DNA from: Mizuhopecten yessoensis
Lineage: Eukaryota
NCBI RefSeq assembly: GCF_002113885.1
Contig: NW_018404981.1
Coordinates: forward strand, 90,136 to 154,135
Length of the DNA: 64,000 nt
Reading direction: 5' to 3'
This document shows, in pieces, positions 6,209-42,986 of this stretch. The translations under genes were made by a program, and so were the position numbers. Every line of letters begins with the position of its first letter. The stretch's first letter is position 1. The notes beneath the pieces are model-generated. The model made no database searches and was not told the DNA's origin. It saw only the letters and a list, made by a program, of their open reading frames with translations.

Positions 6209-6314
6209 TCAGCATACGGGCTTCATGTCCTTTTCCATTTCCGGTAGCTCGGGGATTAGTTTCTCACATCCATGGAGCCTATGTGGATTAGCACTTGACG
6301 CGAGATCGATGAAT
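6209..6314 (-). CDS. Laminin-like gene exon 25 (terminal, stop)
   Basis: FIDLASSANPHRLHGCEKLIPELPEMEKDMKPVC*; acceptor ttgacag, phase 2 fits. Confidence 0.75.
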
Positions 6315-9300
6315 CTGTCAAGAAATGAAATTGACCTATCGGTTAATTTTACAAACGTCAGTGTAGCTACGATATCCTGTTATAAACTTATCGATATTGG
6401 ATAGTCTCTCATGTATTCACAACCATAATTTCATAAATATGATATTTTATCAAGGTAGCAATTAATGGGGAAATTATAAATTTCAAGCTAGATCAAAATG
6501 TATGACACACCGATACAATATATATCTACAATATCAATGCTTATATCAAAGATATACAATTGCTTAGTATCTAAATACCAATCTCTTTGTCAAATTATCT
6601 ACAAATACCGATTTCTTTATTAAAGGACACCACTGAAAGGTATCTAAACAATTCCATCTTTGAGGGTTATAAAAGAGGGAGGTAAGGAAACGCCAATGCA
6701 GCTCAAAGACTCGAATGTCCTGATTACGTAAAGACACTGAATGTTTGTGGCAGGATGAAGTAAGGTTTATGGCATGTTTCACACAGCTTAGACTAGACGT
6801 ATAACATAGTTACATAAGGCATGCTTATCTCTGACAAAGCATATGCTAAATTCCAAGTGGGGTCAGATATCCAAATCCAAAATGAGTAGTTTTATTATCT
6901 TCTCAAAAGGTGTTTTTGTCTAGTTTATAAATAATCCGGATATTCTGTCGTAGATTCCGTAGTATAGTCATACTCACACGTCATTGACAATGACACGTGC
7001 TACTCCTCCAGTAAATGTGGCCGGGTCCTCGCCTTCCTCTCCTCCGACCGTAATTTGGTATTCTGGAGGGCTGTCCCCGCCTATAGTTAGCCATCCTTTC
7101 TGTTTATGTTGCAGGGTCACTGACGTACCATTCAGCGTAACCTTTACTCTATCCCTGCACGAAACATATTGTATTTTAAATATCATTTTTTATTTTGGAT
7201 AGAAAAGATATGAATATATTTACGTCTATTCGCTCTTAGGGTTCTTTCTTGTTGTATTGTCGCATGTACTGACAAGGAAACCCAGCAACATGCTTGCTTT
7301 TAGTCGTATGTGATGATACCATTGTATGTCTTTATGACGTCACAATCATTGTTATTACATGAGATTCATATCAAAATTAGTTTCTGCTTTAATTGCGTCT
7401 TTGATACCAGGGGTAACGATCACTTTCGCCCTCTGCACCCCTGGAATATGTCATAGCAAAATAGAAGGATCAGTGTGCGCCACTTTGTAGATGAGACAAG
7501 AAATTTAGTTTGATTATTTGGTGTACACCAAAAGAAGAATTTCGCGGTAGCGTAACAGTAAAACGTTCCTCTGTAATCTTCAAAGGTCATGTATTAGCCT
7601 AGTGATTGATCAGGTATTTCTACCTGAGACCATTCAAATAGCTAGCCATGTGCCTTCAATTTTGCTATGAAATATTCCAGGGGTTCAGAGAACGTAAGTG
7701 AGCGTTACCTCTGCAGCATCGAGGATGCTTTAATTGATGTGCATACAAGCATGACAAACTCCTATAGATGTGAAAAATAGATATTTGAATACTATCAAAT
7801 GTTATGCTTCTGTAACTAATTACAGATATTTCGTAACAATTATTACTTTGCAGTCGTTGTTCGCACACACATGGTATCAGTGGTTAACGGTGCGTTTAGT
7901 GTAAATTCCTCCTTCGACTTACGCTAGCCGAGGGGCTTATTGTTTTCAAAATATTTTAGCTTTATCTTGCTATATTTCTAATATTGTTTTAAATGGACTG
8001 TAATTGTTTTGTGTGTTTTTTCTGTGTCTCGATAAAGGAGCGGATTGCTCCGAAAATTTGACGATATCATACTGTCTACGCTGTAAGAATGACCTCCTTG
8101 CCCCACGTAAGTATGGAGAGGAATACTACACATACTCTAGGTCCTCCACGACAAGGGTCATCCACGTTTCCTCGTGGTGGGGTGTGGTAAATAGCTTCTC
8201 CTCGTTGTCCACCACACTTTCGGTGATGGTCACTCCCGCAGCATCCAAGTCTATGTTGATGTTAAATTTCTAGGAAACAATCGAGTAATGTTAATCATCT
8301 ATATAAAAGAAATATTTTGCTAGGGATGTGGGGAAATAGCAACCAATTACAACCTAATTTTGACATTAACATTTTACAACAATAAACAATAGTTTGCAAA
8401 CAAAAACTTCTGCATAGATAAGAAACTGTGTAAAGAAATATAGATCTCGTCAGTATTAACGTAGTTTACCCGACCTCATTTAACTGCAAAGATTCCGGTC
8501 ATTTTCAAACATGAGCCGGATATGGCTGTGTCTCCTCATCTTTGAACTTCCTCTACACATTAGAACTTTACACGCCAAGTTTAATTGAAATCTCTCCATA
8601 TTTTAGGGCATTTATCACATCGCCTACTATTAGTTTGAAACAAACTCCTACACGGAAAAATACATGACACAAGCTACCCCTTACGATAGAACTAATCACC
8701 AAATCACAGAAACCTGTATTTTAATGAAAACATCTTACGTCTTTCCTTTTATAGTTGAGAACTGTACCAGCAGCACCGCTACTGACTGTGACGTATATCC
8801 GGGTTGACTCCAGCAGCTCGTCTAACGTTACTGGCGTACTATTTTCCGTAAATTTAACACAGTGATGCCACACCTGAAATGGAGATGTTACGCATTGTTG
8901 TTACAACCCGTTTACTGATTGGCATGTAGCTAATATACAACTATGCTAAATGCCACCACGCATTGTTTGCAATTTAAGTTAAATGACGTGAATCTAAATA
9001 TAAACTCAATGCCATCATTTATCTCACCAACAAAATAGTTATGACGTTATAATAACCATAAGACTTTGTGAATGCATATCCTACCTTGGGTAATTTCTCA
9101 ATCATTTCTGGCTGAAGTCATTTTTTCTATAAATATTGATTTATATCAAAGTTTTACTTTATACACAAACAACGTACGTATCAAACGTGTCGCAACGTTT
9201 CAAGACCGATTGGTCCCTTTGTCAAGCTATGACAAGCTATCAATAGGTGAAACGTACGGAAGCCCTGGAGGGACATTTTTAGTTACCACTTATATGTTAG

Positions 9301-12300
9301 CATTTATTTGTTACTACTTATAAGTGGTAACTAAAATTGTCCCTCTAGGGCTTCCGTAGAAACATCCCGGTTCGAGTGTCATCATCCCTGATACTACAGG
9401 GGTTTCGCTCACTTTCGCTTTATTCACCCCTGGAATATATCGTAGCTAAATTGAAGACACAAGTCTCGCTATTTGATTTGTCTCATGTAAAAAAACACCT
9501 AACCAATTGCTAGGTTCATACATGCCTTTTGAAAATAACAGAGAAGCGATATCCAACTTCAAATCCCGTCAATTGTACCGTTATGCGACAGTGAGATTTT
9601 TCTTATATACACCAAAGGAATAAACTAGTCTTCTTGTCTCATTCACAAGGTGCTGCACACTGAGCCTTCAAATTTGCTATGACATATTTCAGGGATATGC
9701 AGAAAGCGAAAGTGAGAGTTAATACATTTTTTTTGTCACATCGTTGTACAGGTAAACAATACAAGTCTCTCACTCAGTCAGAGCTTGACAAATGGACCAG
9801 TCGGTCATTAAACCTTGCGCCACGTTTAATACGTACACTGTGTATAAAGTATGACTTTGATATTGAATATTTCTAACCCGATGAATCTTATTGAAGATAA
9901 ATATGTATTCTATTCTTCATATACCTAATCCCATGTCACCGATAACAACGGTCAGTTTCAATTAATTAACGAAACCGACAACGAACAGGGTACTATATGG
10001 TTGCAGGTATATTACATTGTCAGCGACAATTGATATTTGGAATGAATGACAAACGCATTAAAATATTATTCTTATGACAAATAATATTATGGCATTGAAT
10101 ATTGCATTCATGTGTTTATCTTTATTTTTTGTAATGTAAATTCCGAAAACACAAATTTTAATTAAAACGGAACAGGTACATTTGTAAAACACTTCACGAG
10201 CATCAGATAAATATGTATTGAGGTCAACTTGATTCTCTACAGACTGACATTGCAAAAGACCAATCCCTACAACGTAGTACAGGGAGGATATTTCTATCGT
10301 TTTTAATATCAGTGATCGTATCCTAGCAACGCTAGAAGTATTAATAACCCTCCTGTATTTCACTCCGTAACTAAGTAACAAATATCCATGGCACCAGCTA
10401 CGTCTTAACCAAATACCATAAGTATGCGCAAAAATAGATTGAAATGTATGACCTATGTCAACAAGTACAAAATATGTTATGGATGATTCAATAAGTTACG
10501 TACAGACATATGCAAATCTACCTGCTTTAGGTTAGGTATGTCCACCTCCGTTATATATATGTTTGAATAATCCTTTTTAGATCTTTTAATCAATGAATCA
10601 GTACACATAATTACCAACATGATATTTCGCACATGGATAAGTTGATCCTCAAGGTTCTATTATTACAAAAACACGACAAGGAGCCGAGAATATCGTCCCT
10701 TATAATTCTGTATAAAAATACAATTCAGTCACCTGCCACTTATTCTAATAGCATTGTTATTGGCAGAGAGAACATGCATTCTTTAATGTTTAAGTAATAT
10801 CAAGTTAATTGAAGTTTCTTAAAAATATAAATGTATTGTTTCATGGGTAAAAAATAAATTGTTATTCTTTTAATCATTACCAAAACAAATACGTTACAAT
10901 ATCGTAATTAATCTGAAAAGTGTGAAAAGGGCGAATATGAGTTACTATAAAAGTAATATAGTCAAGTGCCGAATACATGGGATACTGAACATCTGAGGAG
11001 GCCACGGTGGCCATGTTTAAATGACCGATTAGAAAATGAAATGCGTTACGCACAGGCACGCATGACCGCAAGAAGAAAAAGAAGAGGAAGAAGGAAGTGA
11101 AAGATGAGGTAAACTACGTCCCCAAATCTGGAGGACTTCATAAAGAAAAACGCAGTATTATACTATATTGATTTGACAAAAACACTCATCAATAAAACTC
11201 ACACTGTCTGTGCACGAACCATACACCACGTTCCTGCTTTCTTGTAGCATGTACATGGGAATGTCCTTGTCTGATATACGTAGTGTTGAGATACATCCAG
11301 TCAGTGACCTTCAAAATACAGGTTAGATAAAAGTACATCCTTAAAGTTATTGAATTGGTCAAAACCACTGTCTATGTCCATGATAAGTGACTCATCTCCC
11401 TCTCCCAACATACCCTACCCCACCCTATCTCGATAACTACTAAATTACAGAGTTTTTATTTAACTTATTCTGTTTATGCTCCGGAATTGTCTCTTTTCGC
11501 ATTATTCCTCTTTTATCATTCAAAATATCCAAAGAAAACACAAATACTATGGATAAGCAGTATTATCCGAAAGCAAGCCCATAGAACAAACGAAATGAAA
11601 TGTTGTTGAATTCGAATACCTTTTCTAGGAAATATACACCACATGGCCGTAGCAGCGGGTAATAAGGTAAAAATGTGAATTTTTTCCATTTAATGCATTC
11701 AATGTGGCTTTCTTTTCACCCCTTTTTTCTGTAATAAAATTAGGTTTGTACCTGAGCTTTGTTTTACCAGAAATGATTTGACTCTTCGAACCTAAGCCAG
11801 CAACGTAAATGCCGTCGTCTATTCTGGGAGGGATTTCTTGCGTGGACGTCTCTGGAGAAAACGTGTCTGACACACCATCTAGTGTTGCCTGTATTTCTCT
11901 TGTCTGTACGTTCACCTGCCAAAAAGATCATCAGAGTTTTGAACTGAATTTAATCGACAAAACACTTGTTACTGAAAATCAGATTTTGTCGTTGGACCCA
12001 AATTTCGTGGTTTCTTCAAAACACACTATTTCGTGGGTACATGATTCTTGCATAAAAGGTATCTATTTATAGGGAGAATAGCTTTATGTCAAACCTGAAA
12101 TTCCTTCCTGGACCTATGAATAAGTGCATGAAGAGAACCCACGAAATCAACAAAATTTAAAATCCTACGACTATTAGTGATTTAACAGTAATATATCGGA
12201 TAATATATTATAGAGACACCAAACTATATCTTTTACATGCACGTACTACCTTACTCTAACCTTTAAATCAAATCCAAAAATGTTTTGTCAACAAAATAAT

Positions 12301-15300
12301 GTAACATATCTTGTATAGACGGTACTTTGAATGTGCCAAATTAGGCTTTTTTTCTTTGAATTCGTCTTAATGCTGTACTCTAGCTATCGTTCGGCTTTTT
12401 TAATGAATATTCACTCTCTCGAATCAATTAACAGTGATGAAATGTATCAATTGGTAATTATATTCATACAATTGATATTCATTTATCTGCATTTGAATAT
12501 AGTTATAGCCAAAAATTGACTAAAATGTTGCAACACTTACCTCTACAATGTGGAATAACCCATCTGCGTATGTATTATTGTTGCTTCTAAGAACAGTTGT
12601 TCCCCGCTTAGTTCTCGCCTCCATATGTACAGAACCTTCAGAAACGGAAAGAAGCATCTGGAAATGCTGAAACAGAAAAGGAACTCATGATACTTCGAAA
12701 GGCCCACCTCTTAGCATATACGTGTCTTGCTTTTAGTTCCATATGAGCATTTTTAAAAGCTTAGAAACTGTATGTTACTTAAGCTTTGATACCTGATAGA
12801 GTTGTGATTTAATTGAGATTTAAATGACTCATCGGTCAGGGTTTGAATGACGTTATACAACTTGATATAGCATCTATGTTTGTAAAACATACCATATAGT
12901 CAATATACAAGAACAAATTGATAAAACTTTTTTCTAGATATGTTAAGTTTCTTCCTAGATATGAAGATAATTTAATAATTAACTCATTCAAACTAGTTTT
13001 TGTGTCTTCGCCATTTGACTTCAGAATTTCTTTTGTCTTTCACAAATATCATAGTCAGATATTTTCGTGGGACATAATACCGTTTCGTTGGTACATGATA
13101 ACGAGTACCCACTCAAACGAAAAAATTGCTTTGTCAAATATGTAATTACTATGAATTCGTGGATGAAGATTACCGACGAAATCAATGAAACTAAAAAAAT
13201 ACACGAAACTTAGAGTAAACTGTATCAAGAAAAGAAGTAAGAAATGGCTGTGAAGATACTGGTAAATGCCGTGTGATAAGTTACATCGATATAATGACTG
13301 TTAAACACTTTCATTTTTTAGGACCCAACTTTTATTGTATATTGCATGAGGACCAAAAAATTGAATGGTGTTTTTAATTCGCACTTTAACTCTATTGACA
13401 CCTTTCAATATTTAAAACCCTATTCATAAGCTTACAGTGTAGTAGAATGAATACGTAACGCCAAACTTGATGTATCTTGCACCTAATGTATTTAATGTGT
13501 GTGTGTGCTATGTTTTATATTTCTTAGCCGTGTTGTAAATATTGTGTACTTTCTGTCGACCATACGTGAGCTTAGCTCTTGACTCAATGTGTTCTCGAAT
13601 TTAGATAAAGTCAATTATTTTTATCATCATCTTTCTCTCTTTATTATCCTGTTTATCGCAGTTTCATTGAAGGACTTGAAAATACGAAATAATAACTGAA
13701 TATATAAAGTTTTCGTAGTACTTATTAAAACAAATAGTGAATCAAATATATTCATATTTCCTTTATTGTTCCCAACTGGTGTACCAATAACCCCTGTTCA
13801 GAAGTACGTTTGACATCTATAAATTTCACTGATAAATATATATTTTAATATATATACATGTAAATCACAAATAGCGATAGTATATCTATATCATAAACAG
13901 CGACAATAATTGTGTTTTTGTCTATTCGTATAGAGCCAAATGCTTTTATCTCGTTGCAAATGCCTGATTAAAACGTATAAATGTTATATATTTAGTAACA
14001 TGAATTCTACTTGGGAAGTGATATAGCGTATCTCGGATTGATTTTTGTTCTATTTTATAACGGTAAAGATGACTAAAAACTTGTAAGCACGCGTGATCCG
14101 ATTCTCATTCACATGTACAAAGAAATTATAGATTCTAACACGCATTTTATTTCCACCTCATATTCATGAGTTTTAGCGTGGCTACATATCATACGTAAAT
14201 TAAGATAAGTTCTTATTGCAAATAGTTTGTGAGAGTTTAATCTTATGTTCGTGTTAACTAAATGTCAACGTTACCATTTTGACTTTTTGACTATTTTCGT
14301 CAATGTTACGTCACAATATTATGACGTTATGCATAGTATCGTTATTCTGACGTCACAATTGGTCTTTTTAAAGAAGGGAATATCCATTGCGAAACTGCCT
14401 GAGTTTTTTAATGCTTCATAAATAAGACGACCTCGACGGTAAGCCGGTCTCGAAATTACACCATGGATTCCATTTTAACAAAAATAAACATATTACCGTC
14501 CACATCTTGTCGTAAATAGATGTGACAGTAAATGATATGTTTTCGTATTCGCCCTCCCAAAATGTGACAATGAAATATGATGTCACGCATTTGATTTTAT
14601 TAGAATGTCAAATTACAAAAGTTTCGGAACATGTTTGCTAAAATAAGGTTTTTGTCAGAAAGAAAATGACCAATTCAATATCTTTCAAGAGAGGTGTAGT
14701 AAGCGTAAGCGCACCTGTAGTTGGTCGTTCAATAGCAGCAGGATACCTTCCTTCTGTCGGGTAGAAAATCTCAGATACAGACTTTCCACTCGATAGTACG
14801 GGAGCAACATGGACATAGGGAACATGACATATCCGTTCCCATCAAACACCATTGAAGGTACACTAGATGAAGCACTGTTAAAATAAACATATACATAAGG
14901 CAGCAGCTGAGTATATGGTTGAAATGGATATAAAAAAAANNNNNNNNNNNNNNNNNNNNNNNNNNNNNNNNNNNNNNNNNNNNNNNNNNNNNNNNNNNNN
15001 NNNNNNNNNNNNNNNNNNNNNNNNNNNNNNNNNNNNNNNNNNNNNNNNNNNNNNNNNNNNNNNNNNNNNNNNNNNNNNNNNNNNNNNNNNNNNNNNNNNN
15101 NNNNNNNNNNNNNNNNNNNNNNNNNNNNNNNNNNNNNNNNNNNNNNNNNNNNNNNNNNNNNNNNNNNNNNNNNNNNNNNNNNNNNNNNNNNNNNNNNNNN
15201 NNNNNNNNACATATCCCTCACCAGCGACCGTCATTTACCATACGGTATTAACAAAAATTACATATCCCTCACCAGCGACCGTCATTTACCATACGGTAAT

Positions 15301-18300
15301 AACAAAAATCACATATCCTCACCAGCGACCGTCATTTACCATACGGTATTAACAAAAATAACATATCCCTCACCAGCGACCGTCATTTCCCATACGGTAT
15401 TAACAAAAATCACATATCCCTCACCAGCGACCGTCATTTACTATACGGTATTAACAAAAATCACATATCCCTCACCAACGACCGTCATTTACCATACGGT
15501 ATTAACAAAGATCACATATCCCTCACCAGCGACCGTCATTTTCCATACGGTATTAACAAAAATTACATATCCCTCACCAGCAACTGTCATTTACCATGCG
15601 GTTTTAACAAAAATCACATATCCCTCACCAACGACCGTCATTTACCATACGGTATTAACAAAAATTACATATCACTCACCAGCGACCGTCATTTACCATA
15701 CGGTATTAACAAAAATCACATATCCCTCACCAGCGACCGTCATTTACTTTTACCAACATAACTGGATCGACTACGTAAAAAACTTCCGATATTATTTCCC
15801 GAACTTTTAATTTTTAGAAATTAATTCTCAGGTTTTATTCAAATTACTTCGAAACATGTTCTACCTGAACATTTTCGCTGGACAAATCTTCTTAAATTAT
15901 AGATGAAAGATCGCCACTGGGATAGAGTTTCAGATATTACTATCATTTGTGACCCAACACGACTATGCGCCTGTCTATATATTTTATTGGTGGCTTATAT
16001 TGTCATCAATTAATTTAGGTCACGTTATAGTAACACATCTAGGTCACGTTATAGTAACACATCTAGGTCACGTTATAGTAGCACATCTAGGTCACATTAT
16101 AGTAACACATCTAGGTCACGTTATAGTAACACATCTAGGTCACGTTATAGTAACACATCTAGGTCACATGATAGTAACACATCTAGGTCACGTTATAGTA
16201 ACACATCTAGGTCACGTTATAGTAACACGTCTATTACAGATACTCATTGTGACCGGGCGTTCTAACTTATGTCATTGACGCGAGATGATCTAAAATTAAT
16301 GTCAGCTATCACAATGATTATCACGAACGGCGACATTTCAAGCTGGTTGATATCGACCTACATTTGCCAAAATGCCAAAGTATGCCATTCATTTTGTTTT
16401 GAAAAGAGACAGGTTTTACATAGAATAAAGTGAAGGGTTTAGTTCTACAAAAAGGTTTGAAGGTATTTCTATATTTTTTCCCGGCAAGTTTATCTTAACC
16501 TTAAATAACAGGATGCAGAAATATTCCCTTATTATTTTATCATTTTTATTGATTGATTGATTAAACAGTTTATCCCAGTATTTCTGTAGTATCTACCATT
16601 CCGAGGTACACGTCTTCACAGGTTCTCTCATGGTTCCAGTATTTGCCAATCCAACAGCTTGTCCATTGACCATCACGTTTCCAATACAACCAGACACGTT
16701 ATTATTTCCCTGAAAAAGTGAATTTGATTTCTAAAGTAAAATAAACATATATGTGTATATACATTTTTTATACAAAATGTACGTGTGTCGAAATGCAACA
16801 ATGCAAGATGTAGTATTTGAAGAATTGTTGTGGAAGGAAAATAATTTACATTCAAAAATGGAGAGAAAAAATGATTGCTAATTTGAACTTTAGATCTCGG
16901 AATGTTGTTTATGCAATGATCTGTACAAATTGTTCTTAATTTTACATTCGCGTCAACACGTGACAGTTCACAGATAATCGACAAAAAGACCATCTTTGAT
17001 TTTTAACTGTTAATAAACATATACATTCTTGTGTAAATGATACATTCCATGTAATTCCCTATATATCGAGCTACAGAATGCACCGTTCAAAGAGAGTCCA
17101 AAGAATCAACGTTAGTCGATATATCAAAACCTAGTTTAAATTGTTCTAACAGTACATATCGTCGCATGAATAAATGAAGAAAATGTTTGCAGAAAGGTCT
17201 GTAGCTATATTCATGCAAGCAACAGACTTTATATTGTTTGGAACACCACCTTTGTCTTTCTACAGATGTTAACGCTAAAGTGCCCTGTCAATTCTGGCGT
17301 TATTTTTGTTACATGTGGGATATGTATTGTGACGTCATTCGGTATCATAAAGTCATCATTTTCTATGTTGTGTTATGTCCTGTCAACGTGATAAAAACAC
17401 TCCCTGATGAACCTCTAAACAAGTGATAGTACTAGGGAGGTACTAAGAACCTCTTTTCGTCATTTCTTTTATATTTAACCATCAAAAGGACTTTTTTGTT
17501 TATATATATATATATTTCTTTCTATATTGTTATTTATGTTATATCGCTTTTGCCCGGTTGTATTAAACGAGAAAATTCTATTATGGGTTGTGTTTTAAAT
17601 TTATTCAATTATTATGCATGTTTTCTTCATGCACTGCATTCATTCTCAAAGCTATTTCACTCATCAAAAAATCGATAACTGTCGATTACCAGGCGGCGCT
17701 GTACGTACGTAGATACTTATCACAAGACGTCATACTATAAAAATGTATTTGCGGAAATATTCGTTTCAATGTGAACAGGCTGTTAACCTGGACATGGTGT
17801 GTCGCAAAGGTCACTGATGATGTCAGAAGGCGATTCGATAACGGATGATGGACTATGTAACCTGTATAATTAACCACGGATAATAATTTGTGAACCGCTT
17901 TGAGACGACCTACGGACTAGGTTGTGATTAAGCAGTATATTATAACCTCGAATTGTCATTATTAATATGATTATAAATACATAATATAGATACATACTTT
18001 ATATAGCTAATGAACCTTTGCCATAGAAAAAAGTACCTAGTGACCTAATATATAAATCATAGTACCTTATAAACCTTACACCCTATAGATAGTTATTTAC
18101 ACGGGTACCTACATTTTCGGTTTGTTTTTACTCGAAATGAGAAATTAAATTTATACGAGTAAACTGTAGCCATATAAGATTATGTATTTTTAGCATAAAT
18201 AGCCCCTGGTATCGATTTTATTTTTAAAATCATATACCGATATCCCGATTTTCAGTAAAACATTAAACAGTATACACAATAAGACTTTTCTCAGTTTATT

Positions 18301-21300
18301 TATATATATGCATTTACCACCATTCCGTGCTCAGTGTTTTGGTTCACCTGTCATCAAACTCTTTCAAACACCTATTATTACATTACTAGATTGTTTTTAG
18401 ATAACGTATTAAAATAAAATGAATATCGCAGGTAATATTTATAGCTGCCATATTATTACACGGATAATTATTTTCGCGATCAAGTAAATGCCCTGCGATT
18501 AGGCGAAAAAATACCACCACGATATAACCAGTTATATTGTATATACAAGGCAGATAAGATAGATTACACATATTTATTTTTTAAATTGAGCATATTTTTT
18601 CTAATCCTATCATATGCTTTTGTGAGTATTCACTTTCTTCTTCTTTTTTTAAAACTTATTTTCGGAAAATGCAATTCCCTCATAGATGATGTATACATAC
18701 AAAATAGAAGAAAGGGAATACACATGTCTGCCACATAAGAATGTTTTAATACAGAACATTGGTAATCTCCCATCAATCAAAAGTCTTCAGAAAAAATGAA
18801 TAATAAAAAGACAGAAAGACAAAAAGGATGGACGGATAAACTGCGATAAACCAATGGGCAATAGCGTTTAGTTTGAAACCATTTATTCGAAAATTAAGTG
18901 CCGACTACTTGTACCCGACTTTATTGTCTAGCACATATTTGCTAAAATGTGGCTCTTACCTGGTTAGGGGAACTAGTTCCGCTAACATGTACTGTTGTTG
19001 GAGAGCTCTGTAAAGCCAGCATGTTAGGGAAAGCTATTGCCTCTCGGGTAGGTTCACTGTCATTGCCAAGTCGTGTTGTCCGCATTTCTATGGTTTGACC
19101 GGTTCTGTGAAAAACAATAACTGCATTTCAATGATAGATTAAGAGGTCATCATTTTTCCACCGAAAACGATCAAAATGTTGAAAGAAAATATAATATAAA
19201 GAATCCACAACGGCAAACACAAGGAGAGGTCGGATCTTCCCACCTAGTGATATGTCTATATCTACCTACCTAGTGATATGTTTAGATCTACCGACCTAGT
19301 GATATGTATAGATCTACCTACCTAGTGATATGTTTAGATCTACCCACCTAGTGATATGTCTATATCTACCCACCTAGTGATCTGTATATATCTACCCACC
19401 TGGTTATATGTTTAGATCTACCTACCTAGTGATCTGTATATATCTACCCACCTAGTGATCTATATATATCTACTTACCTTGTGATATGTTTAGATCTACC
19501 CACCTAGTGATATGCAGGTTGTACCACTGCGAATTCTCCATGGTGACGGAGGATTTTATGGTACCGTAAAGTTCCCCATCAGCACCCGTCACAGACACCG
19601 TAGGTACACTGTCCACCAGTCCTATACCATAGGCTACCTTTGTGGTGTAGAAACGTAACATTAGTTAAATATTCCTAGTCGTTTTAAACCTCATTTTATT
19701 TATAGCTGACCTGACCACTGGACAAAATTTGAAATCGTCTTTTTTGGAAACGAACATAATTATTAAAAGGTCTAACATATTTTCCTTTAAATATAAGAAA
19801 CCACTTTCTTCATTTCAATTTTGTAAATGGGTACAAACATGTTCCATGGAGATTTTATAATTGTCCTCAATATCAATGCGTCATTAACTTATTCACCCGT
19901 GAAATTTCGTAATGAACTATACCAACCTTTGAATTGGAAGAGTTTAAATGTGTCTTCAAGGATTAATGAGTTAATGTTTAAATTAGGGTCGTCACACCGA
20001 ATGAAATTAAGTAAACCGTTTACTCGAAACATCTACCGACCGAGTTACCGGTTAACCGTTGACAACCCTAGTTTAAAGGTATGTGGTATGGTCTCTATTG
20101 TCATTTGAATTCAACATACATTTAAACCTGTACAACTGTCAGCAGCCAGGTATAGACACACAAAATCAAAAGCATTCAGTATTATCGAGTAACAAGGTCC
20201 ACGGCACAACTACACCGATCGAACTTGGCGTTTATAAAACAAAGCAGATTTGGTTGAAAACCATACTGATTTCAGTACTAGAAACAAACTTAAGCAATAT
20301 TCCAAAAGTCATTTATTTTATGCTGAAGAGTAGATTTACCTCTGAATCAGTTAAAATTGCAAATAAGAAGAGTTCGTGATAGGATAATTTTGACTAGGAT
20401 TACCTCCCCTTATGTATTGAAGACGAAGCAACTAAACTGGGGATGTTTGGCTGAATTTTCCTTGTCATGTTCTTAATCTTTGAATGTTCATTTTTATTTT
20501 ATAAACTTTGTGGTCCTTATTTTGAATTTTTCATGTTTATGCTTAACTTACTTGTCAAACACAATAACTATAACATTCCTTCATCGGTTTGTGTACGAGT
20601 AAGATGATGTGATCTTATATAATACTTTTCAAAAAATAAAACCATGTACAATGTTCTCAACACACTGTAACAGTTATCAGACGTCAAACCAAAATAGATC
20701 ATTTCTAAATGTCAAACGATGATAGATTAGTTAGTAGGTTGGTGTGTTAAACTACTTACTGTTCCGTTACCATGGAAATTCGCTACCGTCATTGCCGACC
20801 TTTCAGGCTTAACGCACACCTCAAGTGACGTCACCGGAGATTCCGTTTCACCTGTCGATGGCACCTCGAGTTGATATTCCCATCCGTCTACCATTGCTAC
20901 GGAAACCTGTGAGGGATATCATCGTCACTATGTAACCGTGATGACAGGCCTATAGATATTTTTGTTTGAACGCTAATGAGGATGTCCGCTGGGGATGTAA
21001 CCTTGCTAAAGGTTCAACAAGCCCCCGCAATAAAATTCCATGATGACTTTAATCATCTAACTCATGGTTAAAACCCCATTAAACATTAAACATTGAAATT
21101 TCCATGATTTAGATATATATTTAATGATATGTACCGAAGTGCCCTAGTTTATTAGAAGGCAATACTTGTGGTTAATATCTTCATTACAAAGCCTCCTCAA
21201 CATTACCCTCTTACCGGGGTTTTTTTGTTTGGTTTTTTTATTATAATATAACATAAGCAAGCAGTACACAAATTACCAATGTTAAGTTCATTTATTATTC

Positions 21301-30300: not shown

Positions 30301-33300
30301 ATAGAAAAAAACCCGCATAAAATCATTTGAATTTTAAAAGTTTAAATATTTCAGGTTTGGCATATCTAAAGAGCGTTTAGTCAACGCTTTGTCGGTAAGC
30401 AGGGGTCTGAACTCGTGCTGAACGTTTAAACGTGGTTTAAATGTCGTTTTTTGTGAATATTACTCGCCCACATCATTCAAAGTTATGTTAATTCCGGTAC
30501 AGGATCGGTTATTATCATCAACACAAGAATCAAAATATCGATATTCATTTCATAATACAATTTCAATAAGAATTATAATTTTAAATTTCTGTATGCAAGT
30601 AGATATGAAATATAGATCACTTGGAAGTATTTGATATCGATTATAATACGGATCAGGGATACATGAACGCCGTCAAACATAATACTACATAAAGAGATAT
30701 AAAAACAGCATTAATTACATTAAATATTCACATGATTGACTTTAAGAGAATACTTGAATACGGTATTCGGATATCAATATATGATTGAACCTGTATTGAC
30801 AAGAAATATCTTTGGAAACATGCACATGTAGTTTTCATGTAGCGTTTTCAGTGTGATCGTTCAACGGGAGGTAACTCGTAAGTAATATAATTTTCGATAG
30901 TTTTTTTACACAGGATTATATTTTTGTATGTAAATATGTGAAAAATATGAAATCGTTATCCCTACCCTGTTTTTTCATGTTAAGCCTGTTCATTATGTCT
31001 CCATCTTAAATATCTAGTGAAATGCCGTGTAAATAATTGAAACTGTTGATATATTGTTATGAAAGATGTCAGGCATATGATAAGGTTAGACGAGCTGTTA
31101 CGATGTATGTACCGGTACTAACATTCGAAGACTGCGCCCGTCGCCGGGCCGAGATGTGCTCACCAAATGGTACGCGCTAACTTCAGTATAGGGACGCTAC
31201 AATCTTATGTTCATATCTAAAACCAACGATTGTTTTGAAGATATTGTATCATCAACGCAACGCAACTATCAGTCGGAACTGTGATGAGAGAAATGAAAGA
31301 AATTCCAAAAACTCCATTTGTATCTTAAACGCCACTACTGAAAAATTTGCTACCTACCATAAGCACGATTGTTTTCGTCGTGGATAAATTTCAGCTGCTC
31401 TTTCACTTCCATTATATCATGTCGGGCATCGGAGTTTATACTGGTAAAACTTTCGCTGACCTGAAATGTGTTTAAATTAGTTTAAACATATTTTTTTATG
31501 AAAATTAAAGATCAAAACCTACAGATAAATCTACAATCGGTTGAATCATTCTGATTTTGTTTTTAAATGATAATTTAATATTTAATAGTCTTTTCTAGTT
31601 TGTATACGGAACCTATATTCAGAAAACCTTTTACATAAAAGTGGAATTAAAATTCTGTTACATACCTTTTTAACTTTCTTTTGCATAATTTGAAGGATAT
31701 TGGACATTGTGTGTTTGAGGTTGTGCACAGCCACGTTAAGTTTTGGCCGCATTCTCTGTTCCTGTAGAGACAAAAAAAGACAGTATAAATGTAGGCCAGA
31801 ACTAGTGTTTATCAACAAAGTAATATAATCGTCATCGCTTATCTTCATCGTCGTCATCGTCATCCTAGTCGTCTTCATCGGCACGGTGAACGTTATCACG
31901 TTCAGTTCACTAATGAACGAGATCTAACATGATTTCTTTCCGCAAATCATTATTTATATCTCAAATAATTGTCATCGAATAATAAAAATACTTAATTCAA
32001 CAAAGATCTATCAACAATAATTTCCCCAAAAAATAACAACAGCTGCAATGCAATGCACGTCTGTGCACATATGCACATGTATAAGCCAGACAGAGAACCA
32101 TCTTCATATGACCTTAGCTGTTTTGAGAAAATAATACCCCAAACAAACCTACACGTATCTAAGGCAGCCATATGAACAGTTGACTCTTTACAAATGCTGT
32201 TATATAAACATTAAAGATGCATTCATATTGGCATTGAGACCATGCAATTGGGGCATTTGTTTACATTCGCAAGTTTAGAAAATGGAATTTCAATTTTGCA
32301 TTGTAACATAAAAAGGCTAAATGTCACAGCACTCCGATAAGAGTGCACATAACTTAAGGTAAAGAACAATGACCGAAGGAGAATCGCCGTGTTTATCATC
32401 TGGTGCTGTTCTAAATCGGGAAGACATGTTTTTTAAAAACAGGTATACGTTTGTTAATACATCTCGCACAGCGTAATAGTCTGTCGACGATATTCGTAAC
32501 CGATGTCGTCTGCCGAAACCTGATCATCAAGCTATACACACCGATCAGTGGTATTTATGGTTATCGGGCTATAATACTGATCCTGGGTATGTCGCAAATC
32601 AGCAATATTCTGTGACAAATATGATTATTTCTCAAAAATGTGCCAGACGACTAGCTTTTTATTTAGAGACATGATAGTGATTCCAGTCGCTAATCATTTG
32701 AATCGCATACATCTGTGTTATTACTTAAATCAGAATATCTTTAGTGCAAGATGTGGTTACACGAAACTGTTCTTACCCATCTTGAGACCGCTGCGGGCGC
32801 TCTTTGTCCGTATCCATAGCGACGCCGGTATCCTTGACGATGACGATTGTATCTGTAAGGGGAATGACTTTGCATTGAATTGCTTATTGCGATATTTTCA
32901 ACCGCTACTGGACTGATTTGGAGATCCATGGCGGCGTGTTGACGGGGCATCCCATCTTTCCTTTGAAGAGCCTTTTCGTCGACAACCAAGCCATGTCCTG
33001 TCTTTGGCAGATTCCTAGATTTGCTGACATCGACATTAAGTGATGTTCGACGAGGGAATTGTTGTGGGGACGATGCTTTGTGATGTGATGAATGTTTTCT
33101 CCCCGCTTTCAATTGATGTGGTCTACGATTCGTTCCTCTATTTCTTGGAATTTGTTCCGATCTGGATTTTCCCTCAACCTCGTCACGATGACCCGGATGA
33201 ATTGCAGGCGGTCTGTGACGATCATCACGTCGATGGCTAAGTCTCATTTGTCTGTTTCTAGCATTTCGCCGTCGTGAATTCCTTGTAGATCCGCTACTAT

Positions 33301-36300
33301 GGTGGTGTCTGCTTTTGGTAGTAATATCCACATTTTCACATGCTGTAAAACAAAGACATGCATGGAAATTATTTGAAAACGTAACTTCCACGAAAAAAAC
33401 GAAATAGTATGGTGTGATGCAGGAGGTATGCTTCACAAACAAACTTCATTTTTTTTCTCTGTATTTACAAGTTCATAAAAGTGTCTACCGGCTATGAGGT
33501 CACTCTAAATGTGTGTTTTTCTAGTGTTACCACGCTGAAATGTCACAGTTCGGTCACACACTAGAAAATAACATCCTACGTGGAACGCACAGAGACACAA
33601 CTGATACAATATATCAGACGGGGGTCAGCTTTAACTGGTTTGTCAATCACAACATAGGTTTATTTTAACTTGAAATACAAGAAAATATACTGAAAGGAAA
33701 AATAAACATTTGCGGTGATTTGATGTTATTTATTTGAATGTTATATACATTATACGTATGCAAAAAAATCTTTTATGAACAAATTACCAAAATTTCAATA
33801 TATTTTAAATTATAATTCATAAGTAATTGCAATGCATTTGACAGTACCCCGAAATATCGCAAAGTGAAATCGACTGACTCGTCAGTATCTCGTTTGCCCC
33901 TCTCGCTCAGTTGTCACAGCCCTGATTCTGTTGTGCATGGGATTTTTCAGTGCATTTATCCTTCTCATGGGTATACTAGAGTAGCGGAGATATTCTGTCG
34001 CCCCTTTACCCTCCTCTCAAGTTCGTCCCACAGATAATCGCTTGGGGACAAATCTGATCTGTACAGCGGTCAGTCGAGTGGGTTCATACTATGGTTTGCG
34101 AGAAAAGTCTTGAAAAACTCTGGCTACATGGGGTCAGGCATCATCATGCTGGAAAATTAGGCGATGCAGTTGCACAAATGGAACTGCAACCGGCTGGAGG
34201 ATTTAATCCCTATATCTGACGGCGGTTAAATTCCCGGCTAGTACAATAAACGGTGACTTTACCCAGTGAGATATCTCTCCCCAGACCATAACCGAGCCAT
34301 CCCAAACCTATCCCTCTCATGAACGCAAGCGTCGGCGAAGCGTTCCCCCCACGACGTCGGTATACACGACGTCGACCGTCCGGACGAAAAAGAATGACCC
34401 GCGACTCTTCTGTGAAAAATACCCGTATCCGTTGCCTCATTGGAATTCGTCGGGGAGCGTGTGCCGCCAACTAAGCCATACAGCACGCGCGATGTGCACG
34501 AGTGAGAGGCAGATCAACGTTTTGACGACGAGCTCTCACACCAACCTCGCCCAATCGGTTCCTTACAGTTTTGGGGTGAATGTGGTGATTATGATTGCCT
34601 GCCATATTGTGTCAATTACGCAGATGGGCAAGACGAATAGCCCTGTCTTGACGTCGCGTCGTTACGCGCAGACGTCCCAATCGCGGTCGGTCGGCAACCC
34701 TTCCGGTGTCTCGCAAACGACGGACAAGACGTTCTGTGGCGGAAACATTCACACCGAACAGCAAAGGAACCTGTTTGTTGTTGCCTTTGACCTTGCATTA
34801 GCAATGCAATAGCCAGGCCCCTCTGAACTTCCGTCGTCCGTACCATGGTTGCAAGATATTCAAATTGACAGTAAATAGCGGAAAGCGATGTGTATACCTC
34901 AAGAGTATTAAATGGTATGACAAGATGTGTTGGCTAACTTGTCATCATTATTCTGCACGTATTTTGTTTTTCATTTTGTCACTTCACTATGTGGCACGGT
35001 ACCTTACACGGTTGAGTAACTTTAGACAACAGTTTGAGTGACAGGGACCAAGATGCTATAATTTTAGGCCAATCAGTTAAATAACTGTTGCATATTTTGT
35101 TACCCTCCTTTTCTTTATTCTTTCAGTATATTTGAAATAGAACATTAAAAATGCTTCTTATTTGCCAAATAAAGATATTTTAATGAATGTAATAAATGAG
35201 ATTTTACTGATAATGGCGCCACTTGTCATAATAGATCCAAGCCAATGATCCGACTCGGAAAGCAACACTTACTAACATTGTGCACCGTTAAGGTTCAACA
35301 AGCCTCCTAAATGCTGTAGTCACCTAAAATTCCAATCACCTGATAAGTCATATTGAACGACCTTAATTAAATATCGGAACTTATGTATGTAATTTGAATA
35401 TATAACTTTTACATTGGTTATGAAAAAAATGCATAGCCAGGTTAACATAGTCAAAAATAAGGCATTAAGGCTGATGTCGTCATAAAAATTGCTCGCCGGA
35501 CTTATAACATGTCAATCTCTTTTGCTAGCCCAACTGAGTGCTAAGAAATGCCACTAATTAAAGTTAATTTATATGTCTACGTCATGCGGAGCTTTATTTG
35601 ACTTCTACTAGCTGTTGAGAGGAATTTCTTCCTCAAATAAAGATAGATGTTCCCATGCATAACTACTTAAGCCATAGTAAAATACCCGCGTAATTTATTT
35701 AGCAGGTTATAAATAAGAAAACAAAGATGATATGCCATTTAATAACATTCTGTGATGCTGTGGGGTGGCTAGACATGTTATAAACAGTGAACCTTAAAAG
35801 AGTGATAATGTTTATAATATGAAGTTTAAGTTGATTTTATGGTCATATGTCTGTGGTTTCACACATATTTAAATGTACCAGTATAATATGCTACTCGGAC
35901 GTTTCACCATAAATTTTGGACATTCCCAAAGCAACTCTCATCTACTTTTGAGGCCGGTATACATCTCCACACATAGTCAAAGAGAAATTAAGCTCCGCAT
36001 GACCTAGGCATATAAATGAACCCTAATTAAAACATGTATGTCATTTCGAAGCATTCAGTGAGGTAGCTAAAGAGATTGACATGTTATAAGTCCAGTGAGC
36101 TATTTTATAAAGACATCAGCCTTAATGCTTTATTATTGACTACGTTTTCCTGGTTATGTACCTTTCAAGAACCTAATGTACAAGTTCAATACAATTGTAT
36201 TTTTAAATAACATATATATATTTTGATTTTTAATGAAGGATCTGTGAATATGACTTACCAGGGATTGAAATTTTGGGTGACTATTGCATGGTTTAGGAGG

Positions 36301-42300: not shown

Positions 42301-42986
42301 GCAACATGAAAATGATTTCCATGTTATTGATTCCTCAGAATTCAAATCACCACAAAATTGATACATATCATGTTACTACATACCTACCCTGCTAATTACT
42401 TAGGAGCCTTGTAATATAGTATAATATAAAAGTTATTTATAAATTAAGAACATAAACGTACATGAATTTATTCATGTTTTGTTACCAGTTGCTGATAAAC
42501 AATAAATAAATAAACATACACATTTCTGTTTTAAGTATCATGTTATTATATTTGATATCAATATTAGTTAGTAATATGTGTATATACATGTAAATATCGT
42601 CACAACATCGAGAGCTATTGCCAATCCAAGCGTGTCTACTTTACACCGGCAGGAGAGTGCATTGGGCAAAAAACACGACATGTGTTTCCCGGGGGCTGTG
42701 TGTTTATAGCGCTCTAGTTTAAAGTCGTGATAGTCACTTTGTTTTACCTCGTGATTACCTGTATAATACACTCACCTTTCCCAAGACACCGTCTAACACC
42801 TGGTTCTGTTTCATATCCGCTGTCGACACCTCGTGTTTGGGATTGAGGAGACACATTTTCCCTTTTATGTTGTATATCCTTTTCTGATTCGATCTTTCTG
42901 CCTTCGTATCCCGATATTGCTAAGCACGTTAGAATGAAAATTGTATGAAATAATATCCTCAATCGACATTTCACTAATTTTGTCAT
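6209..42986 (-). CDS. Laminin-alpha-like secreted protein (signal peptide, basic IDR, laminin alpha domain I/II coiled coil with mucin/proteoglycan insert, 3 LamG domains); 25 exons, about 1689 aa
   Basis: Exons 42776-42986, 32777-33342, 31666-31761, 31358-31460, 28752-28941, 28171-28336, 27606-27701, 26785-26951, 25771-25888, 23967-25098, 23020-23136, 22132-22428, 21745-21908, 20760-20906, 19504-19637, 18960-19104, 16597-16709, 14715-14874, 12541-12666, 11752-11915, 11203-11308, 8739-8873, 8136-8269, 6978-7154 and 6209-6314 join with GT-AG introns in matching phase into 5070 nt of open frame. Motifs: LRNNIAELRKKIDRARAITSALPVSV (laminin alpha domain II end), NSQWYNLHITR, SGCIGNVMVNG, FDGNGYV, LRFSTRQKEGILL, YADGLFH, SLTGCIS (LamG). 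Confidence 0.8.
6978..7154 (-). CDS. Laminin-like gene exon 24 (LG3)
   Basis: DRVKVTLNG...YQITVGG...TFTGGVARVIVND; gcag/gtgag. Confidence 0.8.
7410..7710. mobile_element. MITE family A (about 300 bp, about 60-bp TIR)
   Basis: cacccctggaatatgtcatagcaaaat ... attttgctatgaaatattccagggg; related copies at about 9398-9720 and 56765-57115. Confidence 0.7.
8136..8269 (-). CDS. Laminin-like gene exon 23 (LG3)
   Basis: KFNINIDLDAAGVTI...HEETWMTLVVEDL; cctag/gtatgt. Confidence 0.75.
8739..8873 (-). CDS. Laminin-like gene exon 22 (LG3 start)
   Basis: VWHHCVKFTENS...IYVTVSSGAAGTVLNYKRKD; tttcag/gtaag. Confidence 0.75.
9398..9720. mobile_element. MITE family A copy
   Basis: cgctcactttcgct...cacccctggaatat ... 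ttgctatgacatatttcaggg...agcgaaagtgag. Confidence 0.65.
11203..11308 (-). CDS. Laminin-like gene exon 21 (LG2 end)
   Basis: SLTGCISTLRISD...NVVYGSCTDS. Confidence 0.85.
11752..11915 (-). CDS. Laminin-like gene exon 20 (LG2)
   Basis: VNVQTREIQATLDG...GIYVAGLG. Confidence 0.8.
12541..12666 (-). CDS. Laminin-like gene exon 19 (LG2)
   Basis: HFQMLLSVSEGSVHM...NNTYADGLFHIVE; tttcag/gtaag. Confidence 0.85.
14715..14874 (-). CDS. Laminin-like gene exon 18 (LG2 start)
   Basis: SMVFDGNGYVMF...LYLRFSTRQKEGILLLL. Confidence 0.85.
14940..15208. other. Assembly gap (probably collapsed 51-bp minisatellite)
   Basis: Run of N adjoining the repeat. Confidence 0.95.
15209..15750. repeat. 51-bp minisatellite (at least 10 copies, runs into an assembly gap)
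   Basis: Unit acatatccctcaccagcgaccgtcatttaccatacggtattaacaaaaat(c/t). Confidence 0.95.
16014..16232. repeat. 24-bp minisatellite (about 9 copies)
   Basis: Unit tctaggtcacgttatagtaacaca. Confidence 0.95.
16597..16709 (-). CDS. Laminin-like gene exon 17 (LG1 end)
   Basis: GNNNVSGCIGNVMVNGQAVGL...KTCTSE; LamG GC motif. Confidence 0.85.
18960..19104 (-). CDS. Laminin-like gene exon 16 (LG1)
   Basis: TGQTIEMRTTRLG...TVHVSGTSSPNQ; tttttcacag/gtaag. Confidence 0.8.
19238..19515. repeat. 26-bp minisatellite (about 11 copies) spanning the exon 15 donor
   Basis: Unit acctagtgatatgtttagatctacc(c/t). Confidence 0.95.
19504..19637 (-). CDS. Laminin-like gene exon 15 (LG1)
   Basis: VAYGIGLVDSVPTVSV...MENSQWYNLHITR. 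Confidence 0.8.
20760..20906 (-). CDS. Laminin-like gene exon 14 (LG1 start)
   Basis: VSVAMVDGWEYQLEVP...VTSLEVCVKP; cacag/gtaag. Confidence 0.8.
21745..21908 (-). CDS. Laminin-like gene exon 13 (laminin alpha domain II end)
   Basis: ...NLRNNIAELRKKIDRARAITSALP; typical of the segment preceding LG1 in laminin alpha chains. Confidence 0.85.
22132..22428 (-). CDS. Laminin-like gene exon 12 (coiled coil)
   Basis: IEERWDTVKGNVAVISDFVNNATE...RIEKAEAIAMTELKKAE...MMTDLLAK; heptad-like. Confidence 0.8.
23020..23136 (-). CDS. Laminin-like gene exon 11
   Basis: CVNQNYFEGDTLQKRAELERDKSDDLMAKSIPISRRHD; aag/gtgag. Confidence 0.75.
23967..25098 (-). CDS. Laminin-like gene exon 10 (Thr/Pro mucin-like plus acidic Ser-Gly region)
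   Basis: 377-codon open frame with TT(P/Q/K)VPTT(P/T)RP repeats and GSGGGDDED, GSGGED, FSGNG, GSGNEGSD; tgtcag/gtaag. Confidence 0.85.
25771..25888 (-). CDS. Laminin-like gene exon 9
   Basis: TIIPVLQKAKKSIDVRRNSGSNVRLQLLAIVGRLADIVT; phases 2 and 0 fit the neighbours. Confidence 0.7.
26785..26951 (-). CDS. Laminin-like gene exon 8
   Basis: RNIELRNAFIERRPPGD...HARQLGRTVESLA; ctttcag/gtgag. Confidence 0.75.
27606..27701 (-). CDS. Laminin-like gene exon 7
   Basis: RYLNSITDMYLDARNYSYTANKEIRAVRRDVQ; cacag/gtatg. Confidence 0.75.
28171..28336 (-). CDS. Laminin-like gene exon 6 (contains RGD)
   Basis: RCMEQERMHAAVLNSL...YGQIRGDVKQRIHTYL; the donor (gtataa) is weak but in phase. Confidence 0.7.
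28752..28941 (-). CDS. Laminin-like gene exon 5 (laminin alpha domain I-like)
   Basis: ALLDVTQLVRF...DMHFKDFSHNVMLADQSQRRAHVMKTIIQRIK resembles the laminin alpha 'mr.rdF....Ae.E...A..ll' segment. Confidence 0.75.
29905..30115. mobile_element. MITE family B copy
   Basis: Closely similar to 54278-54466. Confidence 0.65.
31358..31460 (-). CDS. Laminin-like gene exon 4
   Basis: VSESFTSINSDARHDIMEVKEQLKFIHDENNRAY; tttcag/gtag. Confidence 0.75.
31666..31761 (-). CDS. Laminin-like gene exon 3 (coiled coil)
   Basis: EQRMRPKLNVAVHNLKHTMSNILQIMQKKVKK; ctacag/gtatg. Confidence 0.75.
32777..33342 (-). CDS. Laminin-like gene exon 2 (Arg/His/Ser-rich basic disordered region)
   Basis: Long open frame CENVDITTKSRHHH...RRRYGYGQRAPAAVSRW; acceptor ttttacag, donor gtaag. 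Confidence 0.8.
33688..35128 (-). mobile_element. Decayed Tc1/mariner DNA transposon (about 1.44 kb) in intron 1 of the laminin-like gene
   Basis: Ends tactgaaagga...ttctttcagta, each flanked by TA. Frameshifted transposase from 34846 to about 33870: MVRTTEVQRGLAIALL..., VFFTEESR, IFQHDDA*PHVA, RSDLSPSDYLWDEL (degenerate DD34E). Confidence 0.85.
35292..36311. mobile_element. Non-autonomous foldback element with long TIRs and TTAA flanks (Kolobok-like)
   Basis: ttaa|ggttcaacaagcctcctaaa ... tttaggaggcttgttgaacc|ttaa; inverted similarity extends about 250 bp (e.g. cttataacatgtcaatctcttt / aaagagattgacatgttataag). Confidence 0.75.
41375..41740. repeat. Degenerate minisatellite, unit about 20 bp
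   Basis: tgtgttaacgatatgtttatt variants. Confidence 0.85.
42776..42986 (-). CDS. Laminin-like gene exon 1 (signal peptide)
   Basis: MTKLVKCRLRILFHTIFILTCLAISGYEG: basic n-region plus hydrophobic core. Donor AAG|gtgagt, phase 1, matches exon 2 (GK-A-CENVD). Confidence 0.65.

What the first reader, a model, noticed from the sequence alone, without database searches (positions are those of the whole stretch)
6209..42986. 'Headless, tailless' laminin-alpha-derived secreted protein: coiled coil plus LG1-3 only, short arm replaced by a basic disordered region
Seen: 25 exons splice in phase into about 1689 aa with laminin alpha domain I/II-like motifs followed by exactly three LamG domains and a stop. 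No Cys-rich LE (EGF) repeats, LN or L4 domains are visible between the signal peptide and the coiled coil. Established: canonical laminin alpha chains have LN/LE/L4 short arms and five LG domains. The distal coiled coil plus LG1-3 corresponds to the integrin-binding E8 region, LG4-5 bind dystroglycan and heparin, and LN domains are needed for polymerisation. Inference: this is a divergent, lineage-specific, non-polymerising laminin-alpha paralogue repurposed for a specialised extracellular matrix such as shell, ligament, byssus or the myoepithelial attachment. It might compete for beta/gamma chains or self-oligomerise.
Basis: partly seen in the sequence, partly recalled or inferred. Interest (0 to 1): 0.85.

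Follow-up and report, generated by a model that had tools for sequence, protein, structure and literature searches.

The report
Stripped-down laminin-alpha gene of bivalves
Scallops and oysters share an intact, expressed gene for a cut-down laminin-alpha-like matrix protein. It has lost the parts that build networks and the main sites that bind dystroglycan, keeps the tip that binds integrins, and carries a mucin-like insert in its rod; I found no paper describing it.

Summary
Confirmed, with corrections. The minus strand holds a 25-exon gene (all introns GT-AG, all in phase) encoding 1680 aa, identical to RefSeq XP_021348606.1 of Mizuhopecten yessoensis ('uncharacterized'). RNA contigs from two studies splice exon 1 directly to exon 2 and on to exon 8, leaving no room for LN/LE exons. 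Orthologues in Pecten, Ylistrum, Crassostrea and Saccostrea have the same layout, share the intron positions and end at the same Cys-stop; oyster mRNA contigs hold the whole ORF. The N gap lies in intron 17, which is short and exon-free in four relatives. The last coiled-coil helix plus LG1-LG2 align collinearly with laminin alpha1/alpha2 (E 3e-21). The third domain has an LG fold by structure only. Pfam Laminin_I/II are not hit, and laminin origin of the N-terminal rod half is unproven. A ~330-aa Thr/Pro insert with acidic Ser-Gly sites splits the rod in all species. Best reading: a non-polymerising laminin-alpha derivative pairing with beta/gamma chains to bind integrins while displaying glycans (inferred). 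A shell or byssus role is untested. No paper found; the scan had not noted this on other DNA.

The parts
42776..42986 (-). Exon 1 (aa 1-70): start codon with an in-frame stop just upstream, hydrophobic signal-peptide-like stretch (aa ~9-26), first Cys of a Cys pair
   Evidence: joined to exon 2 in RNA contigs; orthologous exon at 58% identity in the Ylistrum locus
32777..33342 (-). Exon 2 (aa 71-259): second Cys, then an Arg/His/Ser-rich basic low-complexity region (net charge +26); fast-evolving but basic in all species
25771..31761 (-). Exons 3-9 (31761-31666, 31460-31358, 28941-28752, 28336-28171, 27701-27606, 26951-26785, 25888-25771; aa 260-571): N-terminal coiled-coil segment, basic, with Pro-containing breaks
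   Evidence: heptad score above all 100 shuffles; RNA joints for exons 2-8; 27% identity to oysters; no database relative
23967..25098 (-). Exon 10 (aa 572-948): end of the first coiled-coil segment, invariant Cys594-Cys613 loop, Thr/Pro-rich mucin-like tract with acidic Ser-Gly sites, conserved Trp-rich DDPNAG motif
   Evidence: same insert in all scallop and oyster orthologues
21745..23109 (-). Exons 11-13 (23109-23020, 22428-22132, 21908-21745; aa 949-1132): distal helical/coiled-coil segment ending in the laminin-alpha domain II helix; invariant Cys1100
   Evidence: helical in a low-confidence model; the last ~25 residues align with laminin alpha1 5mc9; heptad enrichment not significant
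16597..20906 (-). Exons 14-17 (20906-20760, 19637-19504, 19104-18960, 16709-16597; aa 1133-1311): LG1
   Evidence: collinear with LG1 of laminin alpha1/alpha2
14940..15208 (.). Assembly gap inside intron 17, abutting a 51-bp tandem array (15209-15747); not filled
   Evidence: the orthologous intron is 179-469 bp and exon-free in four species
11203..14874 (-). Exons 18-21 (14874-14715, 12666-12541, 11915-11752, 11308-11203; aa 1312-1497): LG2, the best-conserved domain (44% to oysters)
   Evidence: Pfam Laminin_G_2 E 6e-21 for the whole protein, best stretch aa 1348-1475
6209..8873 (-). Exons 22-25 (8873-8739, 8269-8136, 7154-6978, 6314-6209; aa 1498-1680 plus stop): third LG domain and an 18-aa tail ending in an invariant Cys
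   Evidence: LG fold by AlphaFold2 and Foldseek; no sequence-level hit; same end in all orthologues

Best explanation
A bivalve paralogue derived from a laminin alpha-chain gene, already present in the common ancestor of scallops and oysters, which lost the whole short arm and two of the five LG domains and gained a mucin/proteoglycan loop in its rod. SHOWN: gene structure, expression, conservation, signal-peptide-like start, three LG folds, homology of the last coiled-coil helix plus LG1-LG2 to laminin alpha. INFERRED: it is secreted and assembles through its roughly 520-residue split coiled coil with laminin beta and gamma chains (ordinary or equally divergent ones). The beta/gamma C-termini would close LG1-3 into the cloverleaf that binds laminin-type integrins. 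Lacking an alpha LN domain it could not join the three-arm polymer, and lacking LG4-5 it would lose the main dystroglycan/heparin site. The insert would loop out between the Cys594-Cys613 knob and the Trp-rich motif as an O-glycosylated, probably glycosaminoglycan-bearing brush. It would then act as a cell-anchoring, hydrated, non-network laminin that softens or specialises one tissue's basement membrane. That would be a genetically fixed counterpart of the processed vertebrate alpha3A/alpha4 laminins.
For: The collinear match from the domain II helix through LG1-LG2 ranks laminin alpha1/alpha2 first (E 3e-21 and 3e-20, against neurexin 4e-15). The top Foldseek hits are the three laminin alpha E8/LG1-3 structures over 560-660 columns (low-confidence model). 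ESM Atlas feature hits include alpha3-like and alpha2-like clusters carrying Laminin_II (0.96, 0.95). The retained module is exactly the E8 integrin-binding unit, which needs the heterotrimer and the gamma-tail Glu to work (PMC5580876). The two rod segments sum to about 520 aa against 561-591 in laminins (PMC9788559). The rod is as conserved as the LG domains (dN/dS 0.12-0.16). Acidic Ser-Gly sites occur in all five species checked. Exon coverage in some RNA runs and none in two others suggests tissue restriction.
Against: No Pfam Laminin_I/II hit. The N-terminal rod half matches nothing. The heptad signal of the distal segment is weak (9 of 100 shuffles reach it). From my own knowledge, no laminin alpha chain has a 330-aa insert in the coiled coil, and such an insert could hinder trimer zippering. 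No beta/gamma sequence of this species was available, so partner binding was not tested. The third LG cannot be assigned to LG3 by sequence.
Confidence: 0.5

Rival explanations
1. The protein is laminin-alpha-derived but has left the heterotrimer system. It self-assembles through its own coiled coil (homodimer or homotrimer, perhaps stapled by the spare Cys residues) and works as a stand-alone secreted mucin-proteoglycan whose LG domains bind glycans, mineral or matrix, for example in mucus, adhesive, shell-muscle attachment or shell matrix.
For: Very high divergence from laminins (about 15% identity); the rod lacks Laminin_I/II signatures; the large insert; four invariant Cys (1100, 1163, 1312, 1680) outside the usual LG pairs; basic N-terminal region with furin-like sites in oysters. 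LG domains occur in lophotrochozoan shell-matrix proteins (PMC13425148).
Against: The segment best matched to laminin is the domain II helix-LG1-LG2 unit, and LG1 and LG2 are what clamp the beta/gamma C-termini (PMC5580876). The N-terminal rod is strongly basic (+20 to +25), which would disfavour self-pairing (inference). No paper or proteome names these accessions.
Confidence: 0.3
2. Chimaera. Only the distal E8-like part (exons 11-25) comes from laminin alpha, by partial duplication. The N-terminal rod, basic exon and mucin exon were recruited from an unrelated secreted coiled-coil or mucin gene. The protein would then be an E8-type fragment on a foreign stalk, perhaps acting as a decoy or short-range partner for beta/gamma tips.
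For: Detectable laminin homology starts only about 25 residues before LG1. The N-terminal rod has no hit in PDB, Pfam or the Atlas. A phase-1 intron separates the mucin exon from the distal part.
Against: The summed rod length approaches a full laminin long arm. An N-terminal Cys pair (C-x2-C in oysters, C-x4-C in scallops) recalls the interchain Cys motif at the start of laminin coiled coils (from memory, not tested). Coiled coils diverge fast, so a blank search is weak evidence.
Confidence: 0.15
3. Artefact or unrelated LG protein: the model misses LN/LE or LG4-5 exons, joins two genes across the gap, or belongs with neurexin/agrin/perlecan.
For: The gap lies inside the model. Exons 9-25 were not tested with RNA of this species. 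The third LG alone ranks agrin first in Foldseek.
Against: Exon 1-2 junction and a short 5' piece in RNA; full-length intron-free oyster contigs with in-frame stops upstream and a stop after LG3; matching intron positions and the same terminus in five genomes; no LG-like sequence downstream in the window or 10 kb downstream in four relatives; an ENaC/DEG-like gene ends 8 kb upstream.
Confidence: 0.03

Closest known systems
Laminin alpha1/alpha2 chains (PDB 5mc9, 2wjs)
   Same: Best sequence and structure matches; collinear from the domain II terminal helix through LG1 and LG2; three tandem LG domains directly after a coiled coil.
   Different: No LN, LE or L4 domains, no LG4-5, a mucin insert in the rod, only about 15% identity, no Pfam Laminin_I/II hit.
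Truncated vertebrate laminin alpha3A and alpha4 chains (LM332, LM411)
   Same: Lack the alpha LN domain, do not polymerise, bind integrins and not dystroglycan (PMC11260871; PMC9788559). From my own knowledge, LG4-5 is removed from them by proteolysis and alpha4 carries chondroitin sulfate.
   Different: They keep a few LE repeats and encode all five LG domains (own knowledge). Here the losses are in the gene. In the PDB sequence search the alpha5 chain, the solved member of their alpha3/5 branch, scores far lower (E 0.019). A convergent origin is likely but was not tested with a tree.
Agrin, perlecan domain V, pikachurin/EGFLAM (three-LG matrix proteins and proteoglycans)
   Same: Three C-terminal LG domains; Ser/Thr-rich and glycosaminoglycan-bearing segments; agrin is the top Foldseek hit for the isolated third domain.
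   Different: Their LG domains are separated by EGF repeats and have no coiled coil before them (own knowledge); sequence scores are 17 orders of magnitude weaker than for laminin alpha1.
Database records of this family: LOC110447323 / OWF52764 'Laminin-like protein epi-1' (M. yessoensis), LOC117339075 (Pecten), LOC132561742 (Ylistrum), LOC105342640 and LOC128181232 (Crassostrea), LOC133181020 (Saccostrea)
   Same: The same gene and its orthologues, already predicted by annotation pipelines.
   Different: Named 'uncharacterized' or given an automatic name; several models lack the first exon. No paper in the held library cites the accessions I searched (Ylistrum and Saccostrea ids not searched).

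Membership tests
Laminin alpha chain | Signal peptide (secreted) | tested here: met
   Hydrophobic N-terminal stretch, the most hydrophobic in the protein, in scallop and oysters; no dedicated predictor was run
Laminin alpha chain | N-terminal LN domain (absent in alpha3A and alpha4) | tested here: not met
   No Pfam hit; exon 1 splices directly to the basic exon
Laminin alpha chain | LE repeats and L4/LF domains | tested here: not met
   4 Cys before residue 390; no LE motif in five loci
Laminin alpha chain | Laminin coiled coil of 561-591 aa (Pfam Laminin_I and Laminin_II) | tested here: inconclusive
   About 520 aa of helical/heptad sequence in two pieces; the terminal helix aligns with alpha1 and Atlas neighbours carry Laminin_II, but there is no Pfam hit and the N-terminal half has no match
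Laminin alpha chain | LG1-LG3 directly after the coiled coil | tested here: met
   LG1 and LG2 in register; third domain has an LG fold but its identity as LG3 is not proven
Laminin alpha chain | Five LG domains (LG4-5 present) | tested here: not met
   Stop after the third LG in all species, including oyster mRNA contigs
Laminin alpha chain | Assembly into an alpha-beta-gamma heterotrimer | not testable with these tools
   No beta/gamma sequences and no multimer prediction available
Laminin alpha chain | Phylogenetic placement inside the alpha1/2 or alpha3/5 clade | not tested
Agrin/perlecan/pikachurin/neurexin LG proteins | EGF repeats between LG domains; no preceding coiled coil; transmembrane segment in neurexin | tested here: not met
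   LG domains abut with short linkers, no EGF hit, no second hydrophobic segment
Mucin-type proteoglycan | Thr/Ser/Pro-rich tract and Ser-Gly sites in acidic context | tested here: met
   28% Thr, 15% Pro; acidic Ser-Gly sites in five species
Mucin-type proteoglycan | Glycan chains actually attached | not testable with these tools
   Needs biochemistry

The most novel reading that the evidence does not exclude
Bivalves have evolved a distinct laminin class: an alpha-derived chain that hard-codes the processed, non-polymerising, integrin-only form and is also a proteoglycan, with a 330-aa glycan brush looped out of the laminin coiled coil, and with the C-terminal Cys possibly stapling LG3 back to the rod so that the LG1-3 cloverleaf stays closed. 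It would show that the laminin long arm tolerates a large insertion, or that LG1-3 can work without beta/gamma chains.
Probability: 0.3. Interest if true: 0.8.

Novelty: new variant of a known kind. Interest (0 to 1): 0.6.

Why it matters
Laminin chains have a very stable domain plan across animals, and the short-armed alpha chains described in the reviews I read are vertebrate ones. A conserved bivalve gene reduced to rod plus three LG domains, with a proteoglycan-like insert in the rod, would be an independent and more extreme case. It makes testable whether the coiled coil can be interrupted, whether LG1-3 need beta/gamma chains, and how invertebrates tune basement-membrane or attachment matrices. 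It also corrects automatic annotations that call it epi-1 or leave off its first exon.

Tried and rejected
Pfam scans of single exons were nearly blank (one weak Laminin_G_2 hit). A profile search with the distal alignment returned nothing. A scan of metagenome contigs found no relative. Searches reached only scallops and oysters; they need shared exact words and a similar length, so absence from mussels, clams or gastropods is not shown. The 751-aa model was poor (pLDDT 43) and was used only for ranking hits. The third LG found no PDB sequence match and no profile match to LG1-2. An alternative Cys-containing frame of exon 3 was rejected because the next exon has a stop in that phase (sequence) and orthologues use the other frame. 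The longer exon 11 and 17 and shorter exon 9 of my first chain were dropped after comparison with orthologues. Conserved blocks in intron 1 have indels and stops, so they are not hidden exons. An RGD at aa 433 is present in scallops only and lies in a predicted helix, so it was given no weight. Fahey and Degnan 2012 on laminin evolution is not held, so an earlier mention there cannot be excluded. The joined model was not sent to any search tool; the gap was not filled and the contig of this species was not fetched.
Full report
Gene model. I rebuilt the gene on the minus strand from splice-site candidates. Twenty-five exons from 42986 to 6209 join in phase, with AG/GT at every intron and a single stop at the end. 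A search with exon 12 alone, by reference, returned a Pecten maximus protein at 65% identity, which led to orthologues in Ylistrum, Crassostrea and Saccostrea and to this species' own records. After three borders were adjusted to match the orthologues, the chain is 1680 aa and identical to RefSeq XP_021348606.1 of Mizuhopecten yessoensis. Whole-protein searches used database proteins by id, one of which (P0007) proved identical to the chain. I did not fetch this species' contig or fill the gap.

The gap. The N run at 14940-15208 is inside intron 17, between LG1 and LG2, and abuts a 51-bp tandem array. The intron is phase 2 on both sides. The orthologous intron sits at the same alignment column and is 340, 469, 179 and 384 bp with no exon in Pecten, Ylistrum, C. 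angulata and Saccostrea. Oyster contigs of 4.9-5.3 kb carry the whole ORF without introns. The coding sequence is therefore very probably continuous across the gap, although this junction was not read in RNA of this species.

Is it really headless? RNA contigs from two studies show GT-AG joints for exons 2 to 7. Their loose ends match the end of exon 1 and the start of exon 8, and only about 290-307 letters precede exon 2, of which 211 are exon 1 coding sequence. An in-frame stop lies just before the ATG. No LE-like motif occurs in any frame of the window or of four orthologous loci, and an ENaC/DEG-like gene ends about 8 kb upstream. Oyster mRNA contigs also have in-frame stops before the start. 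A true exon 1 orthologue (58% identity) lies upstream of the mis-started Ylistrum model. Two raw-read runs had no reads on the exons, so expression is probably restricted, but the tissues are not disclosed. Contigs drop rare variants, so a rare alternative first exon is not excluded.

Is it really tailless? All orthologues end in the same K-P-V-C-stop. No LG-like sequence was found downstream in the window or within 10 kb in four relatives.

Conservation. The introns fall at matching alignment columns and phases in scallops and oysters (22 of 24 exactly, two within 2-3 columns); oysters have one extra intron at the start of the mucin tract. Identity to oysters is about 27% in the first rod segment, 31-35% in the second, and 25-44% in the LG domains. 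dN/dS against Pecten is 0.11 over the ordered regions.

What the parts are. A profile of the last helix plus LG1-LG2 hits laminin alpha1 (E 3e-21) and alpha2 (3e-20) first, collinearly from the domain II helix onward. Neurexin follows at 4e-15, agrin at 4e-4 and alpha5 at 0.019. Foldseek on a low-confidence model also ranks the alpha1, alpha2 and alpha5 E8/LG1-3 structures first. ESM Atlas features point to alpha3-like and alpha2-like clusters and to a mollusc LG-only cluster of 55 members. The third domain has no sequence match but folds as an LG sandwich (pLDDT 70; TM about 0.6-0.7). Its start resembles the V-x-F start of alpha1/alpha2 LG3 seen in the alignments, which is weak support for LG3. 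Pfam Laminin_I and II are not hit. The first rod segment (aa 256-592) has significant heptad periodicity but no detectable relative. Between the rod segments lie an invariant Cys594-Cys613 loop, a tract of 28% Thr and 15% Pro with acidic Ser-Gly sites, and a conserved Trp-rich motif, in all species. Four invariant Cys (1100, 1163, 1312, 1680) lie outside the usual LG pairs; a bond from the terminal Cys to the rod is a guess.

Mechanism. Laminin integrin binding needs LG1-3 closed into a cloverleaf by the beta/gamma C-termini, plus the gamma-tail Glu (PMC5580876). LN domains are needed for polymerisation, and LG4-5 hold the main dystroglycan site (PMC11260871; PMC9788559). The gene keeps exactly the first module and about 520 rod residues, against 561-591 in laminins. 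The most likely reading (0.5) is a secreted, non-polymerising alpha-derived chain that trimerises with beta/gamma chains, anchors cells through integrins and carries a glycan brush. Every step after secretion is inferred. Rivals are self-assembly without beta/gamma (0.3), a chimaera with only the distal part from laminin (0.15), and artefact (0.03).

Comparison with what is known. It works most like processed vertebrate alpha3A/alpha4 laminins, but it fails three defining tests of a laminin alpha chain (LN, LE/L4, five LG domains). It should be filed as laminin-alpha-derived rather than as a canonical member. The gene is already in databases as 'uncharacterized' or under an automatic 'epi-1-like' name. 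Nine literature searches found no description; the library lacks most subscription journals and Fahey and Degnan 2012. The range beyond scallops and oysters is unknown because the searches were of limited reach.

Verdict. New variant of a known kind; interest 0.6.

Noticed in passing
window 36690-36956 and 37148-37513 (intron 1): Non-coding blocks 73-79% identical to the Pecten maximus intron at the matching position, with indels and stops; one holds a CCAAT-type motif. Possible conserved enhancer or alternative promoter, or a shared old repeat. Shorter blocks at 38751-38785 and 39821-39929.
   Followed up: partly
window ~50960-62700, minus strand: Exons of an amiloride-sensitive sodium channel (ENaC/DEG, Pfam ASC) gene ending about 8 kb upstream of the laminin-like gene.
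   Followed up: no
window ~34200-34900 (intron 1): GC-rich decayed stretch whose translations look like a Tc1/mariner transposase remnant (by eye).
   Followed up: no
window 19233-19514: 26-bp minisatellite of about 11 copies that overlaps the end and donor site of exon 15, repeating the donor-like sequence; noted before by the scan.
   Followed up: partly
window 29909-30109 (intron 4): Short interspersed repeat that attracts many RNA reads with unrelated flanks, probably an element common in other transcripts; a similar stretch appears near 54286.
   Followed up: no
window 15209-15747, 16016-16233, 41407-41741: Tandem arrays of 51, 24 and about 21-42 bp units inside introns; the first abuts the assembly gap.
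   Followed up: no
L006 3104-3316; L001 9505-10000: Public models of the Ylistrum and Pecten orthologues are mis-started. Ylistrum has a proper signal-peptide exon upstream of its annotated low-complexity first exon; Pecten's basic exon extends about 500 bp upstream of the annotated start.
   Followed up: yes
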